Virus record (IMG/VR): IMGVR_UViG_3300027759_000045
Location: 248,001-312,000 of that record
Length of the DNA stretch: 64,000 nucleotides
Strand: one strand, 5' to 3'
This document shows positions 921-46,230 of this stretch, one piece after another. Below the pieces are notes generated by a model. It did not search any database and was not told where the DNA came from. It worked only from the letters and a program-made list of their open reading frames with translations. The stretch's first letter is position 1. Each line of letters starts with the position of its first letter. Position numbers and translations under genes: made by a program.

Positions 921-2057
921 ATGTCCAATTTCTACTGTGCCGCACCCTGGCGTGGCCTACATATAAACCCACGTGGTGATGTTAAAACCTGTTGTGCAGG
1001 TAATCCCAACATGCTGGGAAACTTAAACACTCAAAACATTGTTGAAATACTCAATAGTGATCTTATGTCTGAAATACGGTCAAGTTTGTCCCAGGGTATT
1101 CCTCATGAGTATTGTTCAAATTGTGTAAAAGCAGAACGCTTTGGTGCAGACTCTGAGCGGGCCTGGCACAACAATGTAAATCCTGGGTTTGATTATGCCA
1201 CTGCTGGCAGTGAATATCATTATCCTGTTATTGTAGATGTACGGTGGAATACAACATGTAATTTAAGTTGTAACTATTGCGGCGAAGCCTGCAGTTCAAA
1301 GTGGGCTGGCCTAAAAGGTATTCCAGTCAAGTCAGGCACAAGACCTTACTATGATGCAGTGTGTGATTTTATTGAACAACACTATGAACACATACACGAA
1401 GTGGCATTGGTTGGCGGCGAGCCACTGTTACTGCCAGAGAATAATCGACTGCTAGATGTAATACCAAAAGATGCAATTGTTACACTGATTACAAATCTCA
1501 GTGGCGAACTTGAAAACAACAAAATATTTCAAAAGTTAGCAACACGAAATCGAGTTGGCTGGAGCATGAGCTTTGACAACATTGGTGAAAGATTGGAATA
1601 TGTGCGTCACGGCGCCGAGTGGTCGCAGATCAAACACAATCTTGGGTTGATCAAAGGATTAATGACCGCACAGGGCCAGTGGGGAGGCATACATGCTGTG
1701 TACAACATCTACAATGCCACACGTATTTGTGAACTGCGACAGTTTGCAGAAGACACTGGAACTACAGTGCTGTGGCAGAACCTATTTCAGCCTGAATACC
1801 TAGATCCGTTCTTGCATGGTCCAGTAGTTGCGGCCGAAGCCATTGCCGAGATTGAACGTTTCTATGCAATGGGCATTGCTACCACTGCTGAAAAAATGTT
1901 CTTTGACAATGCACTAGACATGTATCACAAGGTCACACAAGCCCGCCCTGGAATTGAACAACAATTCCGTGATCATATTTTTCTAAACGAAACCAAGTAT
2001 CACACAGATAAACATGGACAGTTCCAGCAGTTATGGCCGGAGTTCACCAATGTTTGA
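921..2057 (+). CDS. Radical SAM protein with N-terminal twitch domain
   Basis: CAAPW..KTCC and CSNC..E...SER; CNLSCNYC; GGEPLL; SFDNIGERLEYVRHG. Confidence 0.9.
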   Translation: MSNFYCAAPWRGLHINPRGDVKTCCAGNPNMLGNLNTQNIVEILNSDLMSEIRSSLSQGIPHEYCSNCVKAERFGADSERAWHNNVNPGFDYATAGSEYHYPVIVDVRWNTTCNLSCNYCGEACSSKWAGLKGIPVKSGTRPYYDAVCDFIEQHYEHIHEVALVGGEPLLLPENNRLLDVIPKDAIVTLITNLSGELENNKIFQKLATRNRVGWSMSFDNIGERLEYVRHGAEWSQIKHNLGLIKGLMTAQGQWGGIHAVYNIYNATRICELRQFAEDTGTTVLWQNLFQPEYLDPFLHGPVVAAEAIAEIERFYAMGIATTAEKMFFDNALDMYHKVTQARPGIEQQFRDHIFLNETKYHTDKHGQFQQLWPEFTNV

Positions 2058-2787
2058 GAATGCACCTTGTCATGTACAGCAACAGCATGCCGGCAAAACA
2101 CTGCTGTGGTGCAGTATTGACAGTGAACAAGAATACAATAAAAATTTAAAAAATACTCTGCAGCGTGAGTTGTTGTCTCAGAACGGCTGGATTGATCACA
2201 AGATAGAATACCAATACAATGCTCAAGGATTCAGGTCCAGAGAAATTGATCTGACTCAGCCCGGATTTGCTGTGTTTGGGTGTAGTTTTACTCAAGGTCT
2301 CGGACTTCCAGTGGATGAGCTGTACCATGAGAGAATTTCAAAAGAGCTCTCACTTCCAGTTGATAATTTTGGTGTGTTTGGTGCATCCAATGGACTTGCA
2401 TTTAGATTGGCTCACTATTGGCTGCCCATAATCAAACCGAGATTTGTAATTTTACAAACAACTTTTAGAGAACGATTTGAAATAATAAATCAACACAATA
2501 TCAGCACTGTGATGTCGCCAGCCTTTCCTCAAACAGCCACAGTGCAAGAAGTTTTTCGCGATTGGTGGTTCACTGACGCCAACAGCATTGCTGACAAACA
2601 ACGCAATGAACTGGCCATACAACAAGTGTGTCACCAGCTTGATATTCCTGTCCTGGTGATTGACGTTGAAGATTTTAGAAATCCTGTGTTGGGGTTATCG
2701 AGAGATTTAACTCACCCAGGTCCTCCTAGTCATCATCGAGTACATGCGCAAATAATTGACCACTTGAAAAGTTACCAACATGGCTAA
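2050..2787 (+). CDS. SGNH/GDSL-like hydrolase or acyltransferase
   Basis: FGCSFTQG block I, GVFGASNG block II, DLTHPG block V; start at ATG 2050 overlapping the upstream gene end. Confidence 0.55.
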   Translation: MFENAPCHVQQQHAGKTLLWCSIDSEQEYNKNLKNTLQRELLSQNGWIDHKIEYQYNAQGFRSREIDLTQPGFAVFGCSFTQGLGLPVDELYHERISKELSLPVDNFGVFGASNGLAFRLAHYWLPIIKPRFVILQTTFRERFEIINQHNISTVMSPAFPQTATVQEVFRDWWFTDANSIADKQRNELAIQQVCHQLDIPVLVIDVEDFRNPVLGLSRDLTHPGPPSHHRVHAQIIDHLKSYQHG

Positions 2788-4354: not shown

Positions 4355-4379
4355 GGCCAAGTTGGATAAATAGAACACT

Positions 4380-7535: not shown

Positions 7536-8261
7536 ATGTCAACAATGTTAGTCAGCGGCGATAGTTGGACAAGCTGTTGGCCGTTAGAGGAAAGATTAGG
7601 TCATCGAGACAATGGGTGGCCTAATCTTGTAGCATTGAACCTAAATTACAGATTAATTGATAAATCCAGGGCCGGGTCAAGCAATTATAGAATTTATAGA
7701 AAAGCATTTGATGGCCTACTAGATTCTAGCAACAACTTAGTTTTGGTTTTTCTTACCTCATGGACAAGAATGGAAACTGGATCCGGATATGGCGAAAAGC
7801 CTGGGCGTATCTACCAACATGTTCCTGGCCAAAAAACAAAAGAAACAGAATATGTTTTTAAACAGTTTTTTAACGGATACAAAAATTACACAGACATGCT
7901 AAGAATGATTATTTCTCTGCAGACTATAGCTAAATCTCAGGATACTAACTGTTATTTTTTGGACACGTTTGAAAACAACCTATTGTTTGATATCACATTG
8001 GATAAATTTAAACAAATTTTAAAATTTAACCCGGTATTGTATGATAATATGGATAACTGTCGAGTTGAAGATAAGTTCAACACAGTAAAATTATTAACAG
8101 CCGCAATTGATCGCAGTATGTTTATATCCAAGTCACCATATCAAGCACTAATTAAAGATTGTAATCTAGTTGAATCACATCCTGTCGAAGATGGGCACTC
8201 TAAAATTGCTAATGTAGTTTTAGAATTTTTAAAGGAAAAATACAATGGCAAAACCATTTGA
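7536..8261 (+). CDS. SGNH-like protein
   Basis: VSGDSWT, SRAGSSN, C-terminal ESHPVEDGH; more AT-rich than its flanks. Confidence 0.5.
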   Translation: MSTMLVSGDSWTSCWPLEERLGHRDNGWPNLVALNLNYRLIDKSRAGSSNYRIYRKAFDGLLDSSNNLVLVFLTSWTRMETGSGYGEKPGRIYQHVPGQKTKETEYVFKQFFNGYKNYTDMLRMIISLQTIAKSQDTNCYFLDTFENNLLFDITLDKFKQILKFNPVLYDNMDNCRVEDKFNTVKLLTAAIDRSMFISKSPYQALIKDCNLVESHPVEDGHSKIANVVLEFLKEKYNGKTI

Positions 8262-9307: not shown

Positions 9308-9577
9308 ATGGCAGTAGATTTAGCAAGCGAAATTTGGAATGAACTCAAACGGTATGTTAACACAGTAGATCGTGCAGAAGCTGCAGAAACTGTGGTACAG
9401 ATCTTGATGGACAATGATGCAGACGTAGAAGATATCCGTGCAGCCTTCAAGGGCGATTCGGATATCAAACGTGCGCTAACCGCATATCTTGACAACGATA
9501 AAGATTATGTAGACGAAGAAGATGCCGAAGAAGACGAAGACTTTGATGACTTTGATGACAAAGACTGGGAAGATTAA
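9308..9577 (+). CDS. Small hypothetical protein with acidic tail
   Basis: 89 aa, GGAA RBS, coupled to uvsX. Confidence 0.7.
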   Translation: MAVDLASEIWNELKRYVNTVDRAEAAETVVQILMDNDADVEDIRAAFKGDSDIKRALTAYLDNDKDYVDEEDAEEDEDFDDFDDKDWED

Positions 9578-10812
9578 TGTCTTTAAAAAAATACTTCCCG
9601 ATTAACTCACAAACCAGTTGTAGGTCAAAATGGTCGTGGAGTACATTATATTTAAATAAAGGTGCTACCGCATCGTGTCATAGGGCTAGTGTTTCTAGTA
9701 TACCAGAAAATTTTGAAGACTTTCATAACACTCCTATTAAAATACAGGATAGGAGTGTTATGTTACAATCTCAATGGCCCGGCAACGGGTGTGAATATTG
9801 TCAAGATATTGAACACAGCGGAGGTATTAGTGATCGTATGTTTCAAAATCAAATTCCAAATGTATACCCTAAAGAACTTGATCAAGACAATACGTTAACT
9901 GTAGTTAATCCTGCGGTGTTAGAAGTATTTTTTTCTAACACCTGTAATCTATCATGCATTTATTGTGATGCAAAACATAGTTCATCAATTCAAGCCGAAA
10001 ATAAAAAGTTTGGAGGTGCAATACTTCCTGAATTAAACTTTGAATACACTGATAACAAATATCGCGAGCTTGTTCCAAAATTTTGGGCATGGCTTGAAAC
10101 ACATAGCCTATCCTTACAACGATTACAAATTTTAGGTGGTGAGCCCTTCTTACAACCTGATGTGTTGAAGCTGATTGAATATTTTGAACAACATCCGCAC
10201 CCAGACCTAGAGTTTAATTTGGTTACCAACCTTATGTTGCCAATCAAGGTTATAGAACCTATATTGAAAAAACTAAGAGATCTAAAACAACAAAATAAGC
10301 TGAAACGAATTGATATCCAAGTCAGTGTCGATTGCTGGGGATCCGCACAAGAATACACACGGCATGGATTTATGTTAGATATTTTTGATCGTAACATGGA
10401 GTTGTTAATCGAAATGTCTGAATTTCGAATCGGCCTATTGTCAACTATAACTTCACTGTCGATTCCCAGCATGCCCGAGTTAGCACAAAAATACAATCAA
10501 TGGTGTACAAAACAAAAAATATTTTGGTACATGCATTTGGTTCTACCTAATAACAAAAGTGTGTTTGATCCCACTATGTTTGATTACTCTGTATTTGCCT
10601 CTAGCTTAGAATCTGTGTATAATTTATTACCTAAGGAAACTTGGGATGACAAAACCACTCTTGAAAGTTTTGATGGCATTGTATCTAAACTAAAAAACAA
10701 ATGTAAAACAGACCTTATAAGACAACAAGGTCTGTTGCAATATCTTGACACCAACGATTACAGAAGAAAGACCAAATGGAAAGACATTTTTTCCTGGTTA
10801 ACAATAGGATAA
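9577..10812 (+). CDS. Radical SAM protein with N-terminal twitch domain
   Basis: SCRSKW..ASCH, CEYC..IE..SDR; CNLSCIYC; GGEPFL; SVDCWGSAQEYTRHG. Confidence 0.9.
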   Translation: MSLKKYFPINSQTSCRSKWSWSTLYLNKGATASCHRASVSSIPENFEDFHNTPIKIQDRSVMLQSQWPGNGCEYCQDIEHSGGISDRMFQNQIPNVYPKELDQDNTLTVVNPAVLEVFFSNTCNLSCIYCDAKHSSSIQAENKKFGGAILPELNFEYTDNKYRELVPKFWAWLETHSLSLQRLQILGGEPFLQPDVLKLIEYFEQHPHPDLEFNLVTNLMLPIKVIEPILKKLRDLKQQNKLKRIDIQVSVDCWGSAQEYTRHGFMLDIFDRNMELLIEMSEFRIGLLSTITSLSIPSMPELAQKYNQWCTKQKIFWYMHLVLPNNKSVFDPTMFDYSVFASSLESVYNLLPKETWDDKTTLESFDGIVSKLKNKCKTDLIRQQGLLQYLDTNDYRRKTKWKDIFSWLTIG

Positions 10813-10815: not shown

Positions 10816-11268
10816 ATGTGGTACAGTAAAGTTACAGCCAATCTTGGACTCATACCAGACTTTATACAACACTATGAGAATGAGTTAGATCTGGCCAAGC
10901 GAGATTGCAAAATTGGTGGTATAGTAGAAAAAAACATCACCGCATTGCCGGGCATCACAGAGCATAGGTTTAATCAGTTGCAAGAAATTGAGGCAGTGCT
11001 TAATTTTCTCAACATTCAACTGCGCAAGATTCGTCGCAAACACTTTCAGAAATATTTGGAAGGATATGCAAGAGCATTAACTAGTAGGGATGCTGAAAAA
11101 TATGTGGATGGCGAGGATGAAGTAATTGACTACGAAACCATTATTAACGAAGTGGCATATTTACGAAATCGATTTTTGGGCATTATGAAAGCAATGGAAA
11201 GTAAAAACTTCATGTTGGGACATGTGGTTAGACTGCGAGCAGCCGGTATGGAAGATATACAGTTATGA
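10816..11268 (+). CDS. uvsY: Recombination mediator UvsY-like
   Basis: 150-aa helical protein with YLEGYARALTSRDAEKYVDG and AMESKNFML; position downstream of uvsX. Confidence 0.75.
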   Translation: MWYSKVTANLGLIPDFIQHYENELDLAKRDCKIGGIVEKNITALPGITEHRFNQLQEIEAVLNFLNIQLRKIRRKHFQKYLEGYARALTSRDAEKYVDGEDEVIDYETIINEVAYLRNRFLGIMKAMESKNFMLGHVVRLRAAGMEDIQL

Positions 11269-12023
11269 CATTCAGAAACGATGACGAAAGTCATGCACAC
11301 AGTTTACAAACACTCAATACCTTGTTTGAGTACGATGACTTTATGGAAAGCATTGGCACACTGGTTGACCTAGGGTGTGGGTCAGGCGCTGATCTAGAAT
11401 GGTGGGCAACTAGAACAACTCGAGACGATGCCCCGATACCCCTGAATATTCGTTGCACAGGCATAGACACAGGTTCCACACCTGCTGTGGTTAAAAAGCA
11501 TTCTAACATTGTGTATCAAAAAATAGATTTTGAAAATACAGAAAATCTGCCTGGCAAGTCAAAGTTTGATGTGTTGTGGTGCCACAATGCATTTCAACAC
11601 TGTATCAACCCACTGGCAACATTGGCCAAGTGGAACGCTATTGCTGAACCGGGCGGCATGTTGATTATGGCAGTTCCGCAAACCACCAACATGGATATAC
11701 GTCAACTGGCATTTGTGCAACCAAATGGATGTTATTATCATCACACTGTTGTGAGTTTAATGCACATGCTGGCTGTCAATGGTTGGGACTGTAATTCGGG
11801 ATTCTTTTTAAAACAACCAGACGACGAATTCATACATGTAATTGCTTATAAGAGTGAACATGCCCCAATGGATCCAAAGACTACTACTTGGTATGAGTTG
11901 GCAGATAAAAACTTATTACCAGAATCTGCGGTAGCAAGTGTAAATCGCTACGGGCATGTAAGACAACAAGATCTTGTACTGTCCTGGATTGACAAGAGTT
12001 TGTCTTGGCTAGGTCAACAATAA
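11265..12023 (+). CDS. Class I SAM-dependent methyltransferase
   Basis: LVDLGCGSG motif I, FDVLWCHNAFQH, EPGGMLI. Confidence 0.75.
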   Translation: MTFRNDDESHAHSLQTLNTLFEYDDFMESIGTLVDLGCGSGADLEWWATRTTRDDAPIPLNIRCTGIDTGSTPAVVKKHSNIVYQKIDFENTENLPGKSKFDVLWCHNAFQHCINPLATLAKWNAIAEPGGMLIMAVPQTTNMDIRQLAFVQPNGCYYHHTVVSLMHMLAVNGWDCNSGFFLKQPDDEFIHVIAYKSEHAPMDPKTTTWYELADKNLLPESAVASVNRYGHVRQQDLVLSWIDKSLSWLGQQ

Positions 12024-12842
12024 ACGTCGAAGTGGCAATCCTGAGGCAATTTCTTCTGTGTACCATTCTGTGTGTGCTAGACTCTCTAGCCACGCAGTTC
12101 GGTCTGGTTTTGCCGGATTGTTGATTGTGGACAAATCTGTATTGCCAACAGGTGCAGCCAAACTACTAGCATGTACAAACGCCGGCACTCCATTTAACAC
12201 AGCCTGTGCGCCAGGTCCACTGTTATGATTGATCACGGCCCATGCTGTTGACAAGCACCGATCATAATCAAAACTGTCATATGTTCCTTGTATGGGCCGA
12301 GGCATCTCGATAACACAGCCAGGAATATCACTGATACGCTGTCTTGGGTGCGGCCTTATAACAATAGGTCTGTCTGTGTGTTTTCTAACAGCATTGGCAG
12401 TTTCGGTTAACCAAGCCACTGTGGGCGGCTGTCCTGTCCATTGCTCAGAATCAGATCGTTGTGCGGCAATCACAATGTTGTAACCAGCATTGGTCCAAGG
12501 CCTAGCTTCCAGTCTCAACTGTGCCGCACGTCCTGGAATTAACTTTTTTCCATAGTATGCATTGTTACCGGTTCCGTTGACACCTAACTTCCAAGTACTG
12601 CCACGACGTAGCATGCCCACCTCAACCACAACAACAGGGCGATTACTGTTGCGGAATGTTTGCCATACGCCTTGATTGTGCTTCATACGACCGTGCCACA
12701 ACTGACTCCAGATAACAGCAACATCTGCTGAACTATCCATGCTGTTGTGTTCGATACCTATGCTGTCAAGTCCTGCACGTACAGCCGCAAACACCGGTGG
12801 GCTGTTAAGCGCACCGTATTGATCAAAAATACTTACTCTCAT
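12009..12842 (-). CDS. Capsule-synthesis (KpsS/KpsC-like) glycosyltransferase paralog 1
   Basis: IVIAAQ, IVIRPHP, INHNSGPGAQAVLNGVPAF. Confidence 0.55.
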   Translation of the reverse strand: MRVSIFDQYGALNSPPVFAAVRAGLDSIGIEHNSMDSSADVAVIWSQLWHGRMKHNQGVWQTFRNSNRPVVVVEVGMLRRGSTWKLGVNGTGNNAYYGKKLIPGRAAQLRLEARPWTNAGYNIVIAAQRSDSEQWTGQPPTVAWLTETANAVRKHTDRPIVIRPHPRQRISDIPGCVIEMPRPIQGTYDSFDYDRCLSTAWAVINHNSGPGAQAVLNGVPAFVHASSLAAPVGNTDLSTINNPAKPDRTAWLESLAHTEWYTEEIASGLPLRRLLLT

Positions 12843-12883
12843 AATATACCCGGTTAAATATACACTTAGTTATAAGGAAAACA

Positions 12884-13690
12884 ATGAGTCGTAAATTCTC
12901 TGTGGTCACTACATTCAACGCATCGGGCTACAAAAAATACGGCAAAAGAATGATCGAAACATTCCTAAAAACCTGGCCAGCAGAAGTTGACTTGATAGTG
13001 TATACCGAAGATTGCATCATTACTGAATCTGCACCCAACTTGCGTGTGTTAGATCTGCACAGTGACAGTCCTGAACTAGTGGCATTCAAAACAAAATGGC
13101 GCAGTGTTCCCAAGGCCAATGGTGATGTGTCTGCTGATCCAACAAGAAGTAATCGCAAAGACGCTGCCAAAGGATTCAAATGGAATGCTGTACGCTTTGC
13201 TCACAAAGTATATGCCATATTTGCCGCTGCCCAGGCCGCAACTGATTGGCTGTTGTGGATGGATGCCGACACTGTGTGCCACAGTCCCATTACACTGTCG
13301 CAATTGCACAATCTATGTCCCGCCACAGCTGATATTTGTTTCTTAGGTCGTAGAGGCAAGTATACCGAATGTGGATTGTATGCTATGAATCTGTGTTCTC
13401 CCGGTACAGTAGACTTTCTCAAAGAGTTTCAGCGTGTGTATGACGATGCAGAGAACGGAATATTCACCATGAAAGAATGGCACGACAGCTTTGTGTTTGA
13501 TGTTGTGCGTAACTCAATGGCATTGGCACAACACGATTGGAGTAGCCATTTGATTTCAGGAGAAGGTCATCCACTTATAAATTCTGACTGGGGAGCATAC
13601 CTGGATCACCTTAAAGGCAGCAGAAAAGATCAAGGGCGTAGCAGAAACACCGACTTGGTAGTAAAAAGAACCGAGGCGTATTGGCAATGA
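12884..13690 (+). CDS. GT-A fold glycosyltransferase
   Basis: VVTTF, WLLWMDADT DxD motif, EWHDSFVF, DHLKG. Confidence 0.65.
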   Translation: MSRKFSVVTTFNASGYKKYGKRMIETFLKTWPAEVDLIVYTEDCIITESAPNLRVLDLHSDSPELVAFKTKWRSVPKANGDVSADPTRSNRKDAAKGFKWNAVRFAHKVYAIFAAAQAATDWLLWMDADTVCHSPITLSQLHNLCPATADICFLGRRGKYTECGLYAMNLCSPGTVDFLKEFQRVYDDAENGIFTMKEWHDSFVFDVVRNSMALAQHDWSSHLISGEGHPLINSDWGAYLDHLKGSRKDQGRSRNTDLVVKRTEAYWQ

Positions 13691-13711
13691 AAATATTCAA
13701 GGAGACTCGCA

Positions 13712-14359
13712 ATGTATGAAAGCCACGGATGGTGGTTCCCGGATACGGAAACACACTTCCCACAAATGCTCAACAAGAGTATCAGCAAAGGCGGCCCTGC
13801 TGAATATCAGTATCAAGTGCGCAACAAGAGTTTGACCTATGTTACTCAGTTCAGAACTGGTATAGATATTGGTGCCAATGTAGGCCTATGGAGTCGATCA
13901 CTTGTGACAAAGTTTGAGCGTGTGATTGCGTTTGAGCCAGTGCCGTTGTTTAGAGAATGTTTACAACGGAATGTTGCAGGCAAGAACTTTGTTATTATGC
14001 CTGTGGCCTTGGGTGATCAAGACACCACTGCACAAATGACCATAACTGAAGGCAATACTGGACACACTCACATAGATCCCGCCAGTATTGGGTCGGGTGA
14101 TACCGCTGTGGTCAAACTGGACAACTTACACATTGATAATGTAGACTATATTAAAATGGACTGTGAAGGATTTGAGTATCGTGTTATACAAGGCGCAGAG
14201 CAGACGATTCGACAATGGCGTCCTGTTGTGGTTGTGGAACAGAAGCCACACGACATGTATTCAAAGCAGTATGGACAATTTGCGGCCATTGGCCTGTTGG
14301 AATCATTTGGCATGCACAAGCTAGCCCAAGTCAAAGACGATTGGATCATGGGATGGTAA
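13712..14359 (+). CDS. FkbM-family methyltransferase
   Basis: IDIGANVGLWS, AFEP, VALGD, IKMDCEGFE. Confidence 0.85.
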   Translation: MYESHGWWFPDTETHFPQMLNKSISKGGPAEYQYQVRNKSLTYVTQFRTGIDIGANVGLWSRSLVTKFERVIAFEPVPLFRECLQRNVAGKNFVIMPVALGDQDTTAQMTITEGNTGHTHIDPASIGSGDTAVVKLDNLHIDNVDYIKMDCEGFEYRVIQGAEQTIRQWRPVVVVEQKPHDMYSKQYGQFAAIGLLESFGMHKLAQVKDDWIMGW

Positions 14360-14940
14360 GTTCTTACTACAAAGAATCAGTCAAACTAGGTGCAGTGTTT
14401 CAACAAGAAAACAAAAGCTGGGACGGCAAAGATACATTTTCATACCATCGACAGATACGAGATGTGGCACAACGTTATAAATGTAAGACTGTACTTGATT
14501 ACGGATGCGGAAAAGGACATCAGTGGGCAGAAACTACAGCATTTTGGCCTGACACTACGCCTATGACGTTTATTAACTATCTTAATGTTGATAGTGTGGT
14601 TCAATACGACCCGTGTGTTACAGAATTTTCCAGCGAACCTCCCGACCAAAAATATGATTTAGTTATCTGCAATCAAGTGTTAACTTACATACCCGATGAT
14701 GATTTAGAATGGGTCAAACAAAGATTAATGAACTTGGCCGGAACAGCTTGTTTTATAGGCATGCATGTTCAACAGCCTAAGGCCAAAAAACAAATATATA
14801 ACAAACAATACTTTTCTGTTGATCGCAGTCAAGATTGGTACAGAGAATTTTTTAGAAACTGGCAAGGTTCAGACTTGCACTGGTGGTTTCGAGATAAACC
14901 GTATAACCCTAATTGGATGAACAATGACACTAATAGATAA
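14353..14940 (+). CDS. Class I SAM methyltransferase
   Basis: VLDYGCGKG, YDP, YDLVICNQVLTYIP; start at ATG 14353 overlapping the upstream gene end. Confidence 0.75.
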   Translation: MVSSYYKESVKLGAVFQQENKSWDGKDTFSYHRQIRDVAQRYKCKTVLDYGCGKGHQWAETTAFWPDTTPMTFINYLNVDSVVQYDPCVTEFSSEPPDQKYDLVICNQVLTYIPDDDLEWVKQRLMNLAGTACFIGMHVQQPKAKKQIYNKQYFSVDRSQDWYREFFRNWQGSDLHWWFRDKPYNPNWMNNDTNR

Positions 14941-15493
14941 AGATTACAAAGACCAACTGGCATACTTGCATCAAGCAGGCAAGTTTAATAACGGACATAC
15001 AGCCTATCCAATTGTCAAAGACTTTATTGAAAAATATCAGCCTACCGGTGTGTTGGACTTTGGGTGCGGGCAAGGAGGACTAATTGCCGCAATCAAAGAA
15101 CTACATCCCACCATTGAGGTTGCCGGATACGATCCTGGCAATCCGCTCTTCCAATATTTACCAAAACGCCCAATGGATACTGTAGTCAGTACAGATGCTA
15201 TAGAACACATTGAGCCTGATTACCTTGATGCTACATTACGCACCATCGATGAAAAAATGCAACGTTGTGGCTTTTTTAGAATTGCCTGTTATCCAGCAAA
15301 AAAACACCTGCCTGATGGGCGCAATGCTCATCTCATAGTTGAATCACCAGAGTGGTGGCGCAACAAAATACAAAGTATTATGGATGTTGATATTGTGTGG
15401 GAAAATATACAAGTGGTAGATAAAACATCAAAATGGCCCAATGTCAAAGGCCATAACTACGATGTTGTTGTTGTAAAACGTCAGGTCAAGTAA
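14924..15493 (+). CDS. Class I SAM methyltransferase (paralog of the upstream gene)
   Basis: VLDFGCGQG, YDPG, DAIEHIEP, NAHLIV. Confidence 0.8.
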   Translation: MTLIDKDYKDQLAYLHQAGKFNNGHTAYPIVKDFIEKYQPTGVLDFGCGQGGLIAAIKELHPTIEVAGYDPGNPLFQYLPKRPMDTVVSTDAIEHIEPDYLDATLRTIDEKMQRCGFFRIACYPAKKHLPDGRNAHLIVESPEWWRNKIQSIMDVDIVWENIQVVDKTSKWPNVKGHNYDVVVVKRQVK

Positions 15494-31430: not shown

Positions 31431-32514
31431 CAACTGGTGTCCGGAAGTTTATCGTAGTTTATATGTTGACCGGCATAATGACAATCAACTTCAAGTTGCA
31501 CCTTGTTGTCAGGCAACTATACAAACAGTGCCAGTTGAAAATTTTAATTTTAATACAAACGAGTACTTGCAGTCAATTAGGCAACAATTTGCAGATGGAA
31601 AAAAGCCACTGGCCTGTTCGAGATGCTGGCAAGATGAAAATGCTGGCAAGAAAAGTAGAAGATTAAGTGCTATAGAATTTTTTGAACTGCCAACTGAATC
31701 CGACACAGTGATATTAGAAAGTGTTGATCACAGTGCAACATGGGCATGTAATTTAGGTTGCATCATGTGTGGCCCACAGAACTCTAGCACATGGGCGACA
31801 GAACTTAATATATCACAAAAATCGTTATCGGCAATGGGTAGAAAATTTCAAAAGCAAAATAAGTTATTTGATTATTTAGATCTAACTAATGTTAAAAAAA
31901 TACATTTTAACGGCGGCGAGCCAATGCTTAACAATGATCAATTTAATATACTAAAGAGTATTGATTTATCAAATGCTTTTGTGAGTTATAACACAAACGG
32001 AACGGTGTATCCTAGTCTAGACATAATTAATTTGTGGGAAAAAACAAAATTAGTAAAATTGTTCTTTAGTGTAGACGCAACTGATACAGCATTTGAGTAT
32101 GTCAGACACCCTGGAAAATGGGATACGTTAGTTAATAATATCAACCGTATGCGTAAAGAATTACCTGGAAATATCATGTTTGGGTTTAACGTAACTGTGG
32201 GAAATTATAATGTACTTGAAATGCCACTGGTATATGAATGGTTTATGGAAAATTTATCTACAAATAGAGAAGGCGATAGTAGTGACTTTTGTTGGCAACT
32301 CGCATATAATTATAATGTAACTGATCTTTTGCCAAATATAAAACAGGAAGCAATGTCTGCACTGTCCTCAATTGATCAGTTTAGTGGACTTGTAAAAATT
32401 TTAAAATCTACAATGAATAGTCACAATGATAATTGGATACAAGGGTTGAATCAAATTGATCAGAGAAGAAACACAAGTTGGAAAAAAAGTTTGCAAATTG
32501 GAAAGTACTATTAA
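31414..32514 (+). CDS. Radical SAM protein with N-terminal twitch domain
   Basis: WCPEV..APCC, CSRCWQDE..SRR; CNLGCIMC..SSTW; GGEPML; TTG start. Confidence 0.88.
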   Translation: MSNEYNNWCPEVYRSLYVDRHNDNQLQVAPCCQATIQTVPVENFNFNTNEYLQSIRQQFADGKKPLACSRCWQDENAGKKSRRLSAIEFFELPTESDTVILESVDHSATWACNLGCIMCGPQNSSTWATELNISQKSLSAMGRKFQKQNKLFDYLDLTNVKKIHFNGGEPMLNNDQFNILKSIDLSNAFVSYNTNGTVYPSLDIINLWEKTKLVKLFFSVDATDTAFEYVRHPGKWDTLVNNINRMRKELPGNIMFGFNVTVGNYNVLEMPLVYEWFMENLSTNREGDSSDFCWQLAYNYNVTDLLPNIKQEAMSALSSIDQFSGLVKILKSTMNSHNDNWIQGLNQIDQRRNTSWKKSLQIGKYY

Positions 32515-33961: not shown

Positions 33962-35035
33962 TTAACATTCTATTAGCATATTATGTAATTCAGGCAAATA
34001 ATCTTTCATCTGAATTTTTTTAGATGTATCTTGTATTTTAATTTGTTCAAGCATCATTTGAAAATTTTGTTGATCTTGGTTGGTGTGTATTGGTCCTAAG
34101 AAAGTATTATAATCAACTGCAGATAATTGACTTTTTAATAATTTCTTAATTGATTCTGACAGTGCTCTAGGCTGTAACCAACTTGGATTATATACCGGGC
34201 TTACCGAGTACACTATATTATTTTCATTAAACCATTTGATGGTTTTGTTATGATATAAAATATTTAAATTGCTCAATGTGTAATTTGAACTAATATTGTC
34301 AGTTAATTCTCGAAAAAATGTTAGATTGTTAGTAAGATCTGTCCAGTCAAGTGGATATCTCATGTATTCAAATACAGATTCTATTCCGTCGATGCTGACA
34401 GAAAAATTAAGATTCTTAAATTTTGATAAGACTTGTTTTTGCCTGGAAGTTAATTCTACACTGCCGTTAGTTACTATACTCAAAAATACTTCAGTATTTC
34501 CCAATTCAACAAGATATTTTAATAACTCAAAATTTTTCTTTTCATACAAAGGTTCACCGCCGATTAGACTTAATATTTTAAGTTCTTTAAAATTAACTTT
34601 TTCTTTTATCTTGTCTATATCAACAAATTTATTTGAGTTTGGCGGAATATCTAAATCAATGCGCTTGGCCAACTGTGCCCAACTGCTACTACAGTTAGGG
34701 CTACAGCTTATACAAGTTGCATTACAAGTATTACTGGTAAACAATTTGAGAATTAAGATATCATTTAATTTGCCGTTGGTTGCATCTTGTTTTATAGATT
34801 CTAGATCCCTATCCCAATAAAAATCTAATGCACTATTTTTTACTTGTCGATCACTTTTTGATCCATATTCTTCAAGATTCCAACATTTTTGACACGCCGA
34901 ACTTTTAACTCCTGATAACAAGTCTGATTTAATTTGATCAATGTTGTAATTTCGAGGTAGTAAACAGCAATGTGTTTCTTGGCCATTCCAAACTACTTCT
35001 TTTCCTACCCAGGGTAAAACACAAAATGTATCCAT
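33962..35035 (-). CDS. Radical SAM protein with N-terminal twitch domain
   Basis: FCVLPW..THCC, CQKCW..E..SDR; CNATCISC..SSSW; GGEPLY; very AT-rich. Confidence 0.88.
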   Translation of the reverse strand: MDTFCVLPWVGKEVVWNGQETHCCLLPRNYNIDQIKSDLLSGVKSSACQKCWNLEEYGSKSDRQVKNSALDFYWDRDLESIKQDATNGKLNDILILKLFTSNTCNATCISCSPNCSSSWAQLAKRIDLDIPPNSNKFVDIDKIKEKVNFKELKILSLIGGEPLYEKKNFELLKYLVELGNTEVFLSIVTNGSVELTSRQKQVLSKFKNLNFSVSIDGIESVFEYMRYPLDWTDLTNNLTFFRELTDNISSNYTLSNLNILYHNKTIKWFNENNIVYSVSPVYNPSWLQPRALSESIKKLLKSQLSAVDYNTFLGPIHTNQDQQNFQMMLEQIKIQDTSKKIQMKDYLPELHNMLIEC

Positions 35036-41907: not shown

Positions 41908-42801
41908 ATGACACAAAAAATCTTGATTGACAAGTTAGAATTCTACATCACCAACGTGTGTAACTTAACTTGCAACGGCTGTAATCGCTACAACAATTAT
42001 AAATTCAGCGGATGGCAAAGTTGGGCAGAAGCCGAACCTGTTCTCACTCGCTGGGCAGAAAAAATAGACATACGACATCCTGTAATCCTTGGTGGCGAGC
42101 CACTGCTTAATCCTGACATTGTTAAATGGATTAACGGTATTAGGCAATTGTGGCCCAAGCATTCGGGAGTTCAAGTGCAAAGCAACGGAACACGCATCGA
42201 CTGCGTTAAAGGGTTAGATGAGGCTCTTAATCCTAAAGAGGGAAACTGGTTGGGCATTAGTATACACAATCCCAATGACCGAGAAGAAATATTTGCTCGT
42301 GTACGAAACTTCTTAGGACCTACTGTAATAGAAACACAACGCAAAGATGATCCAATTGGTAGCAATTATCAATTTATTAATGATAAAAAATTAACAATCC
42401 ACGCCTGGATGAGCAACAAGTTTGTTCAAAGCAATATTATTGAACTTCCAGACAACAAGTACACACTGTATCAGAGTGATCCTACACGGGCACACGAAAA
42501 CTGTACCTTCCGTAGATTTAAAAACTATCACATGATCAATGGGAAAATCTACAAGTGCGGTCCAGCCGCTCTAATGCCCGAATTTGATGATCAATACCAT
42601 TTTGAAATAAGCGATGAGGATCGTGCTATGCTACACAGCTATCGACCGTTGACCATTGATGAGTTTGATCTACGTGGCAAAGAGTTTATTGACACGATTG
42701 ATAACCAAATTGATCAATGCAAGTTTTGCCCAGAATCATACGAATACAAACCCATCACATTCAGTGATCGTAAAAAACCCTGGATAAAAGAACCAAAATG
42801 A
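41908..42801 (+). CDS. Radical SAM protein with C-terminal twitch-like Cys cluster
   Basis: ITNVCNLTCNGC, GGEPLL, SNGT; C-terminal NC..GKIYKC..CKFC. Confidence 0.88.
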   Translation: MTQKILIDKLEFYITNVCNLTCNGCNRYNNYKFSGWQSWAEAEPVLTRWAEKIDIRHPVILGGEPLLNPDIVKWINGIRQLWPKHSGVQVQSNGTRIDCVKGLDEALNPKEGNWLGISIHNPNDREEIFARVRNFLGPTVIETQRKDDPIGSNYQFINDKKLTIHAWMSNKFVQSNIIELPDNKYTLYQSDPTRAHENCTFRRFKNYHMINGKIYKCGPAALMPEFDDQYHFEISDEDRAMLHSYRPLTIDEFDLRGKEFIDTIDNQIDQCKFCPESYEYKPITFSDRKKPWIKEPK

Positions 42802-43405: not shown

Positions 43406-43798
43406 ATGTCTTACAGCAAAAAGGTGGTCGATCACTATGAAAATCCCAGGAATGTCGGATCTTTTGACAAGACTGATACTGATATTGGTACTGGTATGGT
43501 TGGCGCACCTGCTTGCGGGGATGTCATGAAATTACAAATAAAGGTTGATAATGATACAGGTATTATTACAGATGCAAAATTTAAAACGTATGGCTGCGGA
43601 TCGGCTATTGCGAGCTCGAGCCTTATTACAGAGTGGGTCAAAGGCATGCACATCGACCAAGCAGGAGCAATCAAAAACTCCGACATCGCTGAAGAATTGG
43701 CCTTACCCCCCGTGAAGATACATTGTAGCATTCTAGCCGAAGACGCAATCAAAGCGGCTGTGGACGACTATCGTAAGAAGCATGATCTCGTTAACTGA
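43406..43798 (+). CDS. iscU: Fe-S cluster scaffold IscU
   Basis: YENPRNVG, GAPACGD, GCGSAIAS, LPPVKIHCS. Confidence 0.96.
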   Translation: MSYSKKVVDHYENPRNVGSFDKTDTDIGTGMVGAPACGDVMKLQIKVDNDTGIITDAKFKTYGCGSAIASSSLITEWVKGMHIDQAGAIKNSDIAEELALPPVKIHCSILAEDAIKAAVDDYRKKHDLVN

Positions 43799-44102
43799 TG
43801 CTGCCGCTCGAAAAATACAACAAACAATAACTCGGCGTGGGCACGGTGAAGGAATAAGATTAGGTGTTAGAACCACTGGGTGTTCTGGACTTGCTTATGT
43901 GTTAGAATATGTGGATACACCGCAAGCAACAGATCAATGTTTTGACTGTACTGGTTGCCGAGTGTTTGTTGATCCCAAGTCTGGTGCTTACTTACAAGGT
44001 GTAACAGTTGACTATGTTCGCCAAGGGCTCAATGAAGGTTTTGAATTTCGCAATCCAAATGAACGTGATCGGTGTGGATGTGGAGAAAGTTTCCGTATTT
44101 AA
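43782..44102 (+). CDS. iscA: A-type Fe-S carrier IscA
   Basis: GCSGLAY, FRNPN, CGCGESF. Confidence 0.95.
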   Translation: MISLTDAAARKIQQTITRRGHGEGIRLGVRTTGCSGLAYVLEYVDTPQATDQCFDCTGCRVFVDPKSGAYLQGVTVDYVRQGLNEGFEFRNPNERDRCGCGESFRI

Positions 44103-44121: not shown

Positions 44122-44940
44122 ATGAATTATTATTTTGAACCTGCTCCTTATCTTTCGTTAAATTTAAATCTAAAAACAGAATTGTCTAATTTAGATAGAA
44201 GCAAGTTAACAATTGCAGATGCAGCATTATATGACATGGATCCTGTGAGATTAAGTAACATAGTAGAAAACATTTATTCTGATGAAAAACAATGTTTTTT
44301 TGATTTTTACGGTGATAACTTTACTAATCTAGCATCATGCACCACCTGGTATCTGCCAGAGAAATTGGAAAAATTGTTACTCAGTGAGTATGAGTATTTT
44401 TTTAATTTAATCAACGAAGCTCCTGAAATACGATTACAAGCAATGACTGGTGTTCAATTGCCTGTGCATGTTGATCGTCATAGAACTGTAAGTATCATAC
44501 TTCCATTGAAGAATCATTCAAATACATGGACAAAATTTTATGATCACGACATTGATATTCTCCACTGGAACAACCACTATTCAAACAGCAAGGATCAGTC
44601 TTGGCCCGAATGCAAAACACTCTGGGATTTTAACTTTCTTCCCGAGTTCGTAAAACAAGAATTGCTTGAAAATGCACACACTCATACACTGTTAACTGAA
44701 GGTATTCGTCGTCAACGAATACCACCCTTAGTTAATCCAACCCAGACAACTGAAGTTTGCGAAGTTGAAATTGATAAATTTCCTTATATACTCAATGTTG
44801 ATAAATGCCACAGTGTTTACTGTCCTGACGCACCCACTGATGAGAATCCCCGCTTGGCAGTATTTTTCAAGTGGCGAGAAATTAAATTTACTCAAGTATT
44901 AGATGCTTATAATCAATTTGTCAAATTTAAAATTAATTAA
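44122..44940 (+). CDS. 2OG-Fe(II) oxygenase-like protein with inserted KDxSWP module
   Basis: PVHVD (HxD), distal KCHSV, PRLAVF. Confidence 0.5.
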   Translation: MNYYFEPAPYLSLNLNLKTELSNLDRSKLTIADAALYDMDPVRLSNIVENIYSDEKQCFFDFYGDNFTNLASCTTWYLPEKLEKLLLSEYEYFFNLINEAPEIRLQAMTGVQLPVHVDRHRTVSIILPLKNHSNTWTKFYDHDIDILHWNNHYSNSKDQSWPECKTLWDFNFLPEFVKQELLENAHTHTLLTEGIRRQRIPPLVNPTQTTEVCEVEIDKFPYILNVDKCHSVYCPDAPTDENPRLAVFFKWREIKFTQVLDAYNQFVKFKIN

Positions 44941-44946
44941 AATTCA

Positions 44947-46230
44947 ATGATTACCCAAACAATTGAATGGATTAAAAATAATCCTACATTTTGCACAGCA
45001 CCATATTCTGCCTACGATTTTAGATTCAACGTTGGCAAATTTAAAGTTACTACGTGCTGTAATTTAGACGTGTCCAAGACCAACCAAGCACTGGATTTTA
45101 ATTTTATAGAAAACGTCAAACAAGACATGTCACAAGGACTAGTGCCCAAGGCTTGTTGGCGTTGTGCGTCCGAAGAACAAAACCAAGCACAGTCTGAACG
45201 TGTAAAGTACATGCTAGGACACACCGTTGCTGAATTAGAACAGTTTAAGGAAAATAAAAAAACAAACGAATTTCAAGTTGGTATGAAGTTTAGCAATCTT
45301 TGCAACTTAGCTTGTCGTAGTTGTAACGAAACTGACAGTAGTTTATGGGCCAAATTAATGAATACGCCTGCGCCTCCTGAATATGAAATTGACACGTCAA
45401 CAGACCAGTTTCTTTGGGATCAAATGACCAATATGATTCGTTCTAAACATAAAGAAACTGATAATTTCATTGTACATCCAATTGGCGGAGAAACAATGAT
45501 TCAACCAGGATTTTTAAAATTAGTTGATTGGTTGATTGAAGAAAATTTAGCCAACACCACTACACTACGAATTACCACCAGTCTTGTGCCCAGTATATCT
45601 GAAAAGTTTTCTGCAAAATTTGCACAGTTTCGCCGCATAGAATTTCTTTCCAGCATCGACAGCATTGGAGAAAATTATCATTACGTCCGTTGGCCTGCCA
45701 GGTTCAACAAAATAGAAGATAACCTGGAAACATTCAATCTGTTGAGTCGGCAATATCCTGGCAAATTTTCCTTGTCGGTCAGCCCGGTATTTTCATTAAA
45801 TAACATTTTTTATGCAGTGGACTATCTTGATTGGTGGAAACGCTGGGCCGACCAAACACAAACTGATTTATGGATGTCAAACATACACTTGTATAATCCT
45901 GAGCCATTGATGGTGGAAAGTTTATCATTACAATACTACCCGCAACTGATTGAACTGTTAGAGCAATGTGTAAACCACACAGTATTTAAAAAATACACAC
46001 GCACTGCTGTGCTGAAAGAATTCTTTGTTGCCATGCTTGCAACAATTTCTAATAACAAAAACAACAACAACGAGTTGCGTTTTCAAGAGTACCTGAAGTT
46101 CACTGCAGATTATGATAATCGCACAACCACCGATAGCTACACCTTAAATTCTAAACTGTTTGATTTACTGTCAGACTCCCATAAACATATATACAACTCT
46201 CATTTGCAACATGTACAATCCAAAATTTAA
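44947..46230 (+). CDS. Radical SAM protein with N-terminal twitch domain
   Basis: FCTAPY..TTCC, CWRC..E..SER; CNLACRSC..SSLW; GGET; SIDSIG. Confidence 0.88.
   Translation: MITQTIEWIKNNPTFCTAPYSAYDFRFNVGKFKVTTCCNLDVSKTNQALDFNFIENVKQDMSQGLVPKACWRCASEEQNQAQSERVKYMLGHTVAELEQFKENKKTNEFQVGMKFSNLCNLACRSCNETDSSLWAKLMNTPAPPEYEIDTSTDQFLWDQMTNMIRSKHKETDNFIVHPIGGETMIQPGFLKLVDWLIEENLANTTTLRITTSLVPSISEKFSAKFAQFRRIEFLSSIDSIGENYHYVRWPARFNKIEDNLETFNLLSRQYPGKFSLSVSPVFSLNNIFYAVDYLDWWKRWADQTQTDLWMSNIHLYNPEPLMVESLSLQYYPQLIELLEQCVNHTVFKKYTRTAVLKEFFVAMLATISNNKNNNNELRFQEYLKFTADYDNRTTTDSYTLNSKLFDLLSDSHKHIYNSHLQHVQSKI

What the first reader, a model, noticed from the sequence alone, without database searches (positions are those of the whole stretch)
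921..46230. Dispersed family of seven radical-SAM/twitch enzymes slotted singly between core genes: candidate virion or DNA tailoring system
Seen: six paralogs (921, 9577, 23903, 31414, 33962 minus, 44947) with an N-terminal twitch domain (C..P/W..CC, CxxC..E..SxR) ahead of CxxxCxxC-x4-SS, GGE and S-x-D..R motifs, plus one C-terminal-twitch enzyme (41908). Each interrupts otherwise core-gene neighbourhoods (nuclease|terL, uvsX|uvsY, uvsW|clamp region, primase|helicase, helicase|head genes, iscA|exonuclease), often with start/stop overlaps. Several are visibly AT-rich. Known: N-terminal twitch rSAM proteins are a recognised family of unknown function, as I recall mostly from uncultured aquatic sources. 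Inference: with the SGNH, sulfotransferase-like, 2OG-like, methyl- and glycosyltransferase genes and phage IscU/IscA, they form a distributed, rapidly exchanged chemical-modification pathway. It may act on virion glycans or proteins, or on DNA, to diversify the surface or evade defences.
Basis: partly seen in the sequence, partly recalled or inferred. Interest (0 to 1): 0.82.

Follow-up and report, generated by a model that had tools for sequence, protein, structure and literature searches.

The report
Swappable radical-SAM enzyme genes in jumbo phage
An uncultured freshwater jumbo phage carries six very different copies of one uncharacterised iron-sulfur (radical SAM) enzyme family, each inserted as a single gene between conserved genes and present or absent in close relatives; what the enzymes modify is still unknown, though the evidence leans towards sugars.

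Summary
Six ORFs score above the curated cut-off of NCBIfam NF033640 (N-terminal twitch radical SAM). A seventh (41908) is a generic radical SAM enzyme. The six are deep paralogs (20-29% identity) and fall in six separate places of the family tree.

Genomes about 88-91% identical at DNA level lack r2, r3 and r4 precisely. r5 is replaced by another paralog, and the r6 slot is empty in all six relatives sampled. r1 is present in only 22 of 46 terL-anchored relatives. Five of the six are AT-rich, and r1, r4, r5 and r7 are under purifying selection. IscU and IscA are present.

The family is very large (over 6,000 clusters at 50% identity) and mostly viral. There it occurs in multi-copy arrays whose commonest neighbours are glycosyltransferases.

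No characterised close relative exists by sequence or fold. The twitch domain matches BtrN. The best guess, at low confidence, is independent sugar or glycan tailoring oxidoreductases.

Multiple radical SAM genes with Fe-S assembly genes in T4-like aquatic phages were already reported in 2017.

The parts
921..2057 (+). r1: N-twitch radical SAM enzyme (378 aa), between the nuclease gene and the g2014/terL module. It is the most widespread paralog and has genome-like GC (0.436).
   Evidence: NF033640 203 bits and Pfam SPASM at residues 6-68. AF2 model pLDDT 95. More than 2,000 metagenome homologs at 75-90% identity. Present upstream of terL in 22 of 46 terL-anchored relatives. dN/dS 0.04-0.12.
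9577..10812 (+). r2: N-twitch radical SAM cassette (411 aa), inserted exactly at the uvsY start codon. It reuses the TAATG stop/start overlap of the upstream gene.
   Evidence: NF033640 209 bits. Absent in L058 (about 88% nt identity) and in 18 of 20 relatives. Lies inside a starred clade of mostly Bdellovibrionota sequences. GC 0.351.
23903..25051 (+). r3: N-twitch radical SAM cassette (382 aa), downstream of the UvsW-like helicase.
   Evidence: NF033640 184 bits. Window 23893-25101 is absent in L087 (about 90% nt identity) and the slot is empty in 14 of 14 relatives. GC 0.368.
23880..23896 (+). Left copy of the 17-nt direct repeat that flanks r3 (AACTAGAATGGAAATAA). It covers the end of the uvsW-like gene.
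   Evidence: The two copies match at 16 of 17 positions. In 300 control window pairs the longest repeat was 14 nt. L087 has a single copy where the two genes overlap.
25102..25118 (+). Right copy of the r3-flanking repeat (AACTAGAATGGAAGTAA). It holds the likely true ATG (25109) of the downstream gene.
31414..32514 (+). r4: N-twitch radical SAM cassette (366 aa), between primase and DnaB-type helicase. It starts at the TTG that serves as the helicase start in relatives lacking it.
   Evidence: NF033640 209 bits. Absent in L086 and L087, and the slot is empty in 69 of 72 relatives. Orthologs in L085, L089 and L142; dN/dS 0.16. Contigs lacking r4 occur in the same lakes. GC 0.339.
33962..35035 (-). 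r5: N-twitch radical SAM cassette (357 aa), on the opposite strand, in the helicase|g35098 hot spot.
   Evidence: NF033640 212 bits. Of 54 relatives, the slot holds none in 29, one in 20 and two in 5, including different paralogs on either strand. dN/dS 0.11. Lowest GC in the window (0.303).
44947..46230 (+). r6: N-twitch radical SAM cassette (427 aa), between the g44122 cassette and a PD-(D/E)XK nuclease gene.
   Evidence: NF033640 183 bits. IscA is followed directly by the nuclease gene in 6 of 6 relatives. GC 0.373.
41908..42801 (+). r7: generic radical SAM enzyme (297 aa) with an N-terminal CxxxCxxC and a C-terminal C-x17-C...CxxC pattern. It is not a member of NF033640.
   Evidence: Pfam Radical_SAM 46 bits; NF033640 25 bits. 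No match to the N-twitch profile. Present in L086-L088 and L114 only. dN/dS 0.06.
43406..43798 (+). IscU-type Fe-S scaffold.
   Evidence: Pfam NifU_N 184 bits. Conserved in relatives at 79-98% identity.
43782..44102 (+). IscA / A-type Fe-S carrier.
   Evidence: Pfam Fe-S_biosyn 68 bits.
7536..8261 (+). Non-rSAM accessory cassette in the ssb|uvsX slot. It has an N-terminal GDS(W) motif (SGNH-like).
   Evidence: Replaced by other sequence in L058. GC 0.344. The motif was read from the sequence. No Pfam hit.
27409..28323 (+). Non-rSAM accessory cassette; sulfotransferase-like as a lead only.
   Evidence: Absent in L087. GC 0.336. Atlas feature hits to sulfotransferase and DUF2972 clusters. No Pfam hit.
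44122..44940 (+). Non-rSAM accessory cassette; cupin / 2OG-oxygenase-like as a lead only.
   Evidence: Absent in most relatives, and homologs sit in the ssb|uvsX slot of L027 and L075. GC 0.338. Atlas leads.
11265..18911 (.). Sugar/glycan gene block: four SAM methyltransferases including an FkbM type, a GT8 glycosyltransferase and a cytidylyltransferase + mannose-6-P-isomerase-type cupin.
   Evidence: Pfam. A link to the rSAM genes is inferred, not shown.

Best explanation
The window comes from a ~347-kb uncultured freshwater jumbo phage. Its large terminase is about 51% identical to those of PA5oct- and Atu_ph07-type phages.

SHOWN. The phage carries six deep paralogs of the N-terminal-twitch radical SAM family. 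Each has the Cys sets for two [4Fe-4S] clusters. One set is the CxxxCxxC motif that binds the cluster needed to cleave SAM. The other is a BtrN-type twitch domain with four Cys, placed before the catalytic core instead of after it. The genes are accessory single-gene cassettes inserted exactly at junctions of conserved genes. They are gained, lost or replaced among closely related genomes, yet they are kept under purifying selection. The phage also encodes IscU and IscA.

INFERRED. Each enzyme makes a 5'-deoxyadenosyl radical and abstracts a hydrogen atom from its substrate. The fully Cys-ligated auxiliary cluster then most likely takes up an electron, as in the dehydrogenases BtrN and anSME. 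The most likely substrates are sugars, nucleotide-sugars or glycans. On this reading each paralog is an independent, interchangeable tailoring step that alters a phage-made or host envelope carbohydrate, not a link in one fixed pathway. IscU and IscA would help meet the extra demand for Fe-S clusters.

The anatomy and the evolutionary behaviour are about 0.9 certain. The carbohydrate target is about 0.35-0.4 certain.
For: Family membership. Conserved Cys and motifs. The family profile's N-terminal positions 5-71 match the BtrN twitch domain (E 3e-7). The AF2 model of r1 has pLDDT 95. Deep paralogy: 20-29% identity and six separate tree positions. Precise indels relative to genomes 88-91% identical. 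Slot occupancy tables. Variants lacking r4 and r5 in the same lake samples. Low GC of the cassettes. dN/dS 0.04-0.16. IscU and IscA. Carbohydrate lean: glycosyltransferases are the commonest Pfam class among 233 neighbours of family members in cellular genomes, in two separate halves (GT2 9+5, GT7 3+3, GT1 2+3), with carbamoyltransferase, GDSL and sulfate-activation genes. A bacterial operon starts with a sugar-nucleotidyltransferase followed by about 10 rSAM genes. The phage itself holds a GT8, methyltransferases and a cytidylyltransferase-cupin. No RiPP recognition element or precursor gene accompanies the cassettes.
Against: No characterised enzyme is close. The best PDB sequence and fold matches of the core are generic or peptide-modifying SPASM/twitch enzymes (8vpo, SkfB, anSME, SuiB), with TM only 0.35-0.44. 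Some family members are fused to TPR repeats, which suggests protein partners. In the window the cassettes lie among replication and recombination genes, not beside the sugar genes. About nine in ten bacterial neighbours are not glycosyltransferases, and most matched no recurring Pfam family. The background glycosyltransferase frequency in those genomes was not measured. No biochemical datum exists.
Confidence: 0.4

Rival explanations
1. The enzymes are protein- or peptide-modifying maturases, like anSME, SkfB or cyclopropyl synthases. They would install crosslinks, epimerised or oxidised residues in phage structural proteins or in host proteins.
For: The family profile's best PDB sequence hits for the core are RiPP or protein maturases: 8vpo (E 1e-16), SkfB and anSME. 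Foldseek ranks SkfB, anSME and SuiB first. TPR-repeat fusions exist in the family. The cassettes that share the slots include Asp/Arg-hydroxylase-like and sulfotransferase-like leads, which can act on proteins.
Against: No RRE domain is present, and no second SPASM cluster. No small precursor gene travels with the cassettes. The small neighbours g9308 and g35098 are conserved genes, present whether or not the slot is filled. All hits to named maturase families lie far below their cut-offs. Structural similarity is at the generic rSAM level (TM about 0.4).
Confidence: 0.25
2. They act on nucleotides or nucleic acids, either to modify DNA or RNA or to make or destroy nucleotide signals. In that case they would be rapidly turning-over counter-defence genes.
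For: They sit between replication and recombination genes. Presence/absence polymorphism at hot spots is typical of counter-defence genes (established knowledge). There are weak hits to viperin, QueE, MoaA and NrdG models, and viperin and MoaA appear among the fold hits.
Against: Those hits score 20-40 bits against cut-offs of 130-380, and they reflect the shared rSAM core. The auxiliary cluster has four Cys ligands, unlike MoaA, whose open iron binds GTP (established knowledge). Cellular neighbourhoods are rich in glycosyltransferases, not in nucleotide-metabolism genes. The same slots also take SGNH-, sulfotransferase- and cupin-like genes.
Confidence: 0.15
3. They are passengers: selfish or neutral cassettes that spread by recombination at gene junctions and contribute nothing to the phage.
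For: Single-gene indels, low GC and patchy distribution resemble free-standing mobile genes of T4-like phages.
Against: All catalytic and cluster-binding residues are intact in all six. dN/dS is 0.04-0.16. There is no nuclease or transposase domain. Only r3 has a flanking repeat beyond chance. The phage keeps IscU and IscA.
Confidence: 0.05

Closest known systems
NCBIfam NF033640 (N_Twi_rSAM), twitch domain-containing radical SAM protein
   Same: All six ORFs pass the curated cut-off over the full model length and share the family's invariant Cys, SS, GGE, S-x-D and R positions.
   Different: There is no difference in kind. The family itself has no assigned substrate or reaction, and no paper in the searched library names it.
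T4-like marine environmental viral genomes with Fe-S assembly genes and up to 12 radical SAM genes (Nishimura et al. 2017, PMC5332604)
   Same: T4-like core genes, IscU and/or an A-type carrier, plus several radical SAM genes in one genome. Those authors proposed that the phage scaffolds serve phage-encoded Fe-S enzymes.
   Different: That work counted superfamily members only. It did not name the N-twitch family or report the single-gene slot polymorphism or the cellular reservoir. Here the genome is a freshwater phage of about 347 kb.
BtrN (2-deoxy-scyllo-inosamine dehydrogenase), the prototype twitch radical SAM enzyme (PDB 4m7t)
   Same: The family profile's N-terminal 67 positions align to the BtrN twitch domain (E 3e-7). 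The Cys spacing is the same: C-x17-C ... C-xx-C (the BtrN residue numbers are from memory).
   Different: The domain order is permuted (twitch before the core). The cores are only generically similar. BtrN is about 270 aa and lacks the C-terminal helical domain seen in the r1 model.
SPASM/twitch peptide and protein maturases (anSME, SkfB, SuiB, cyclopropyl synthase 8vpo)
   Same: They give the best sequence and fold matches for the catalytic core.
   Different: One auxiliary cluster, not two. No RRE and no precursor gene. TM-scores are only 0.38-0.44, and the family-specific models score far below their cut-offs.
Vibrio phage K566 / K567 radical SAM cluster (OZ196521.1, OZ196593.1)
   Same: K566 holds four family members, 134-207 bits against the profile built here. 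K566 and K567 are the only records of the GenBank phage collection that matched r4; the r1 search matched none, and r2, r3, r5 and r6 were not searched.
   Different: There the genes are clustered, not dispersed. They are about 23% identical to the window's genes and carry HGGDP instead of GGEP.
Multi-copy 2OG-Fe(II) oxygenase genes scattered through T4-like cyanophage genomes
   Same: A redox-enzyme superfamily present in several divergent copies per phage genome, of unknown role (from memory, not tested here).
   Different: The fold, cofactor and chemistry are different. This is a comparison of pattern only.

Membership tests
NCBIfam NF033640 N-terminal twitch radical SAM | Whole-protein score at or above the curated cut-off (170 bits), covering the full model | tested here: met
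   183-212 bits for the six, over model positions about 1-397 of 398. r7 scores 25 bits and is not a member.
NCBIfam NF033640 N-terminal twitch radical SAM | Four-Cys auxiliary-cluster domain located N-terminal to the CxxxCxxC core | tested here: met
   Cys at 6/24/65/68 in r1, with equivalents in all six. These are invariant or 99% conserved in 112 sequences. Pfam SPASM matches r1 residues 6-68. The BtrN twitch domain is matched by the profile.
Radical SAM superfamily | CxxxCxxC motif, GGE SAM-binding motif and partial TIM-barrel fold | tested here: met
   Motifs are invariant. Pfam PF04055 is at or near threshold for five of the six N-twitch proteins (r2 and r4 pass the 29.5-bit cut-off; r1, r3 and r5 score 25-28.5 bits; r6 has no Pfam hit) and is met by r7 at 46 bits. 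The AF2 model shows alternating strands and helices and gets rSAM fold hits with probability 1.0.
Radical SAM superfamily | Binds [4Fe-4S] and reductively cleaves SAM | not testable with these tools
   This needs anaerobic reconstitution and a 5'-deoxyadenosine assay.
Canonical SPASM/twitch enzymes (Grell, Goldman and Drennan 2015) | Auxiliary-cluster domain C-terminal to the radical SAM core | tested here: not met
   The domain is N-terminal in all six. Only r7 has a C-terminal Cys pattern, and no profile detects it.
RiPP radical SAM maturases | RiPP recognition element and an adjacent precursor peptide gene | tested here: not met
   There is no RRE or other extra Pfam domain. The adjacent small ORFs (9308-9577, 35098-35346) are conserved genes that are present when the slot is empty.
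Viperin / QueE / MoaA / NrdG (nucleotide-acting rSAM) | Score above each model's curated cut-off | tested here: not met
   15-32 bits against cut-offs of 131-325.
Free-standing homing-endonuclease-type mobile genes of T4-like phages | Nuclease domain (GIY-YIG, HNH, LAGLIDADG) in the inserted gene | tested here: not met
   No such domain appears in Pfam or NCBIfam scans. The pattern of insertion between core genes is nevertheless shared.
Phage Fe-S auxiliary gene set (Nishimura 2017) | T4-like genome encoding IscU and/or an A-type carrier together with several Fe-S enzymes | tested here: met
   IscU and IscA, seven rSAM genes and T4-like core genes.

The most novel reading that the evidence does not exclude
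The N-twitch radical SAM genes are a combinatorial toolkit shared by two kinds of bacterial killers: jumbo phages and predatory Bdellovibrionota. Each cassette performs one radical-mediated edit of an envelope or virion polymer, probably a glycan. Swapping cassettes at gene-junction hot spots would then let these predators diversify or disguise that polymer in an arms race with prey and with rival phages. This would also mean that a very large enzyme family (over 6,000 clusters at 50% identity) catalyses chemistry not yet described.
Probability: 0.18. Interest if true: 0.8.

Novelty: new member of a known kind. Interest (0 to 1): 0.58.

Why it matters
The family is very large: 27,197 clusters at 50% identity with E<=1e-3, and 6,122 at E<=1e-30. 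It is almost entirely environmental and has no assigned reaction. It is therefore a sizeable blank in radical SAM enzymology.

This window shows that one phage can hold six very different members. It also shows that these are among the fastest-turning-over genes of an otherwise conserved genome, and that they are nevertheless kept functional. Genes with that behaviour usually sit at the phage-host interface.

The apparent concentration of the cellular members in predatory bacteria, next to glycosyltransferases, gives a first testable direction. Vibrio phages K566 and K567 offer a cultured system in which to test it.

If the target is a surface glycan, the genes would bear on host range and superinfection exclusion in abundant lake phages.

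Tried and rejected
1. Megablast of window 1-20000 and tblastn of r1 against GenBank phages gave no match. The lineage is uncultured.
I replaced it with a degenerate DNA pattern for the C-N-L-x-C-x-x-C-x-P-x-x-S-S-x-W signature.
3. Foldseek of the r1 model against the PDB gave only generic rSAM hits and no functional assignment.
4. Literature searches for the family name, for jumbo phage + radical SAM and for Bdellovibrio + radical SAM found nothing on function.
5. I first took r1 to be a fixed core gene, because all 80 loci found with r1 itself had it next to terL. I rejected this after an unbiased terL-anchored sample showed it in only 22 of 46 relatives, with the nuclease gene abutting terL in L310, L315 and L359.
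6. A common flanking repeat or attachment-like site for the cassettes was rejected. Only r3 exceeds the chance control.
7. r7 as a circular permutation of the same family is not supported. The N-twitch profile does not match its C-terminus.
8. The weaker rSAM-like partners next to family members in Bdellovibrionota are two further unclassified rSAM groups and gave no functional clue.
9. tRNA and Rfam scans of the window found nothing.
10. Pfam at relaxed thresholds did not confirm the SGNH, sulfotransferase or 2OG assignments of the other cassettes. Only Atlas leads support them.


Full report
**1. The observation**

All seven ORFs exist as described. Six score 183-212 bits on NCBIfam NF033640, "twitch domain-containing radical SAM protein", whose curated cut-off is 170. 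The matches cover the whole model. These six are 921-2057+, 9577-10812+, 23903-25051+, 31414-32514+, 33962-35035- and 44947-46230+. The seventh, 41908-42801+, is a generic radical SAM protein: Pfam PF04055 gives 46 bits and NF033640 only 25.

C113, N114, C117, C120, S125, S126, G165, G166, E167, S217, D219 and R229 (r1 numbering) are invariant in the six. Most of them are invariant, and the rest at least 86% conserved, in a 112-sequence family alignment. Each protein has four N-terminal Cys with spacing C-x14-21-C ... C-xx-C (x17 in r1 and r5). No further paralog lies in 46-64 kb.

**2. What the proteins are**

The family profile's first ~70 positions align to the twitch domain of BtrN (PDB 4m7t, E 3e-7). 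Its core aligns best to SPASM/twitch enzymes: 8vpo (a cyclopropyl synthase), SkfB, anSME and BlsE, then viperin and MoaA. PMC10878394 cites entry 8VPO.

An AlphaFold model of r1 built on the family alignment is confident (pLDDT 95.1, pTM 0.91). It shows the N-terminal cluster domain, the rSAM barrel and a C-terminal helical domain. Foldseek against the PDB returns only generic radical SAM matches (TM 0.35-0.44). No characterised enzyme is therefore close.

Four conserved Cys would fully ligate the auxiliary cluster. In BtrN and anSME (established knowledge) such clusters act in electron transfer during substrate oxidation and do not bind substrate. That is the basis for proposing dehydrogenase- or epimerase-type chemistry. 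It is an inference.

**3. The genome**

The window is part of IMG/VR contig 3300027759_000045 (346,856 bp). Near-identical sequence occurs in freshwater and lake metagenomes. The large terminase is about 51% identical to those of PA5oct-like Pseudomonas phages, Sinorhizobium phage Phosso and Agrobacterium phage Atu_ph07.

The following genes were confirmed:
- T4-like replication and recombination genes: ssb, UvsX, UvsY, a UvsW-like helicase, primase and a DnaB-type helicase.
- IscU, IscA and a PD-(D/E)XK nuclease.
- A block of methyltransferases, a GT8 and a cytidylyltransferase-cupin.

**4. Evolutionary behaviour**

*Deep paralogy.* The six are only 20-29% identical to each other. They fall in six separate places of a 170-sequence family tree. 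r2 lies inside a well-supported clade of mostly Bdellovibrionota sequences, while r4 and r5 lie in viral clades. They are therefore not a recent in-genome expansion.

*Precise gain and loss.* DNA alignment with relatives about 88-91% identical shows clean single-gene differences:
- L087 lacks window 23893-25101 (r3) and 31428-32518 (r4), and carries other DNA in place of r5.
- L058 lacks r2.
- r2 and r4 begin at the very start codon that serves the downstream core gene in genomes without them.

*Slot occupancy in relatives:*

| Slot | Occupancy |
|---|---|
| r2 slot | empty in 18 of 20 |
| r3 slot | empty in 14 of 14 |
| r4 slot | empty in 69 of 72 |
| r6 slot | empty in 6 of 6 |
| helicase/g35098 slot (r5) | none in 29, one in 20, two in 5, of 54; different paralogs on either strand |

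*Same-sample variants.* In the lake samples that hold the window's own genotype, other contigs join primase directly to helicase, and helicase directly to g35098. The joint sides are short, so this is supportive only.

*r1 is not fixed.* r1 looked fixed in loci that were found with r1 itself. A terL-anchored sample shows an r1-type gene in 22 of 46 relatives. All seven relatives with terL at least 90% identical have it. Another paralog sits there in 2 relatives, and none in 22. In L310, L315 and L359 the nuclease gene abuts terL. r1 is thus the oldest and most widespread cassette, not a core gene.

*Composition and selection.* Five rSAM cassettes and three other indel genes (7536, 27409, 44122) make up eight of the nine lowest-GC genes among 75. 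dN/dS is 0.04-0.12 for r1, 0.16 for r4, 0.11 for r5 and 0.06 for r7. The flanking terL and helicase genes give 0.03-0.09. The cassettes are therefore maintained as working genes.

*Flanking repeats.* Only r3 is flanked by a repeat beyond chance. It is 17 nt (16 of 17 identical) and duplicates the stop/start overlap of the two neighbouring genes. There is no common insertion signature. Exchange by homologous recombination through the conserved flanks, after rare illegitimate insertions, is the likeliest route (inference).

**5. The family at large**

A profile of the six finds 27,197 clusters at 50% identity with E<=1e-3, and 6,122 with E<=1e-30. These include tandem fusions of two or three modules and TPR fusions. 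The nearest ESM-Atlas clusters are 90-100% viral. The sampled cluster members are all metagenomic.

Among GenBank phages, r4 matched only Vibrio phages K566 and K567 and r1 matched none; the other four paralogs were not searched. K566 holds four family members in one cluster.

I scanned 185,579 species genomes with a degenerate pattern for the family signature. Of these, 114 hold true members and about 79 are Bdellovibrionota, several on Mb-size contigs. Many loci hold 2-5 paralogs within 8 kb, beside other unclassified rSAM genes. The order of the scan is unknown, so this taxon share is provisional.

**6. Clues to the substrate**

I scanned 233 genes lying within 1.5 kb of family members in those cellular loci, in two halves. 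Glycosyltransferases were the commonest Pfam class both times (GT2 9+5, GT7 3+3, GT1 2+3). Next came further rSAM and B12-rSAM genes, GDSL hydrolases, carbamoyltransferases and sulfate-activation genes.

One bacterial operon starts with a sugar-nucleotidyltransferase. It runs through about ten rSAM genes, including a TPR/N-twitch fusion, to a GDSL-like gene and an asparagine synthase.

In the phage, the cassettes that share the slots look like other tailoring enzymes: SGNH-, sulfotransferase- and cupin-like. These are leads only.

This points to carbohydrates more than to peptides or nucleic acids, but weakly:
- Most neighbours are uninformative.
- The background glycosyltransferase frequency was not measured.
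- TPR fusions and the maturase-like core keep the protein hypothesis alive.

**7.

"Rapidly exchanged" is supported. "A distributed pathway" is unlikely. The genes vary independently between near-identical genomes, which fits stand-alone modules acting on a common scaffold better than consecutive steps. "Virion glycans, proteins or DNA" remains open, with a lean to glycans.

**8. Prior knowledge and novelty**

Nishimura et al. 2017 (PMC5332604) already reported T4-like marine viral genomes that carry IscU or A-type carriers with 2-12 radical SAM genes. They proposed that the scaffolds serve phage Fe-S enzymes. NCBIfam already defines the family.

New here are:
- the identification of the specific family;
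- the six-fold deep paralogy in one phage;
- the exact single-gene slot polymorphism;
- purifying selection on the cassettes;
- the apparent Bdellovibrionota reservoir with glycosyltransferase neighbours;
- a cultured phage that carries the family.

This makes the finding a new and well-documented member of a known kind, with an unknown reaction behind it.

Noticed in passing
window 46160-46930 (+): A 256-aa protein with a PD-(D/E)XK nuclease domain exactly at the Pfam threshold (22 bits). It may be the Cas4-like Fe-S exonuclease type that the 2017 paper lists among phage Fe-S proteins. Its listed TTG start overlaps r6 by 71 nt and may be wrong.
   Followed up: partly
window 46949-48529 (+): A 526-aa protein with a pectate-lyase / rhamnogalacturonase-type beta-helix domain (63 bits). 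It could be a polysaccharide-degrading tail spike, which would fit a glycan-centred host interface.
   Followed up: no
window 27409-28323 and 44122-44940: Two AT-rich accessory genes share a 39-residue segment at 49% identity (E 1.5e-6), although they are otherwise unrelated. Homologs of each turn up in other slots of relatives: g44122-like in ssb|uvsX of L027 and L075, and g27409-like after the helicase in L136.
   Followed up: partly
window 921-2057 compared with L058 and L286-L289: r1 is only 72-76% identical in relatives whose flanking terL and g2014 are 92-98% identical (dS 1.4 against 0.6). The r1 allele has therefore been swapped by recombination independently of its flanks.
   Followed up: partly
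window 25070-25759 (+): The ORF finder's GTG start at 25070 is probably wrong. The homologous start in L087 corresponds to the in-frame ATG at 25109, inside the right copy of the r3-flanking repeat.
   Followed up: yes
L081:2164-17736 (bacterial MAG GCA_027401895.1): An operon with an NTP-transferase followed by about ten radical SAM genes of several types (B12-binding, SPASM, N-twitch/TPR fusion), then a GDSL-like gene and an asparagine synthase. It is an uncharacterised multi-rSAM biosynthetic locus.
   Followed up: no
P0121-P0171 (metagenome proteins, 750-1413 aa): Many family members are tandem fusions of two or three complete N-twitch rSAM modules in one polypeptide. Some also carry TPR repeats (P0130, P0136).
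   Followed up: partly
L285:3594-10330 (Vibrio phage K566, OZ196521.1): A cultured 255-kb Vibrio phage has four family members in one cluster. The ones inspected carry HGGDP in place of GGEP. A PagP-like lipid A acyltransferase gene lies about 3 kb away.
   Followed up: partly
L169:1-8000 (Chloroflexota MAG): Three repeats of a two-gene unit: an N-twitch rSAM followed by a ~315-355-aa weaker rSAM-like gene. Similar pairings recur in Bdellovibrionota loci (L194, L246, L248, L250) and suggest two-enzyme modules.
   Followed up: partly
window 2014-2787 (+): A 257-aa gene overlaps both r1 (by 44 nt) and terL, where a small terminase would be expected. It has no family hit and contains an FGCSFTQG motif reminiscent of SGNH block I. 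It is highly variable among relatives (27-94% identity).
   Followed up: no
window 1-64000: ARAGORN found no tRNA or tmRNA gene in the 64 kb, and the Rfam gathering-threshold scan found no RNA family.
   Followed up: yes
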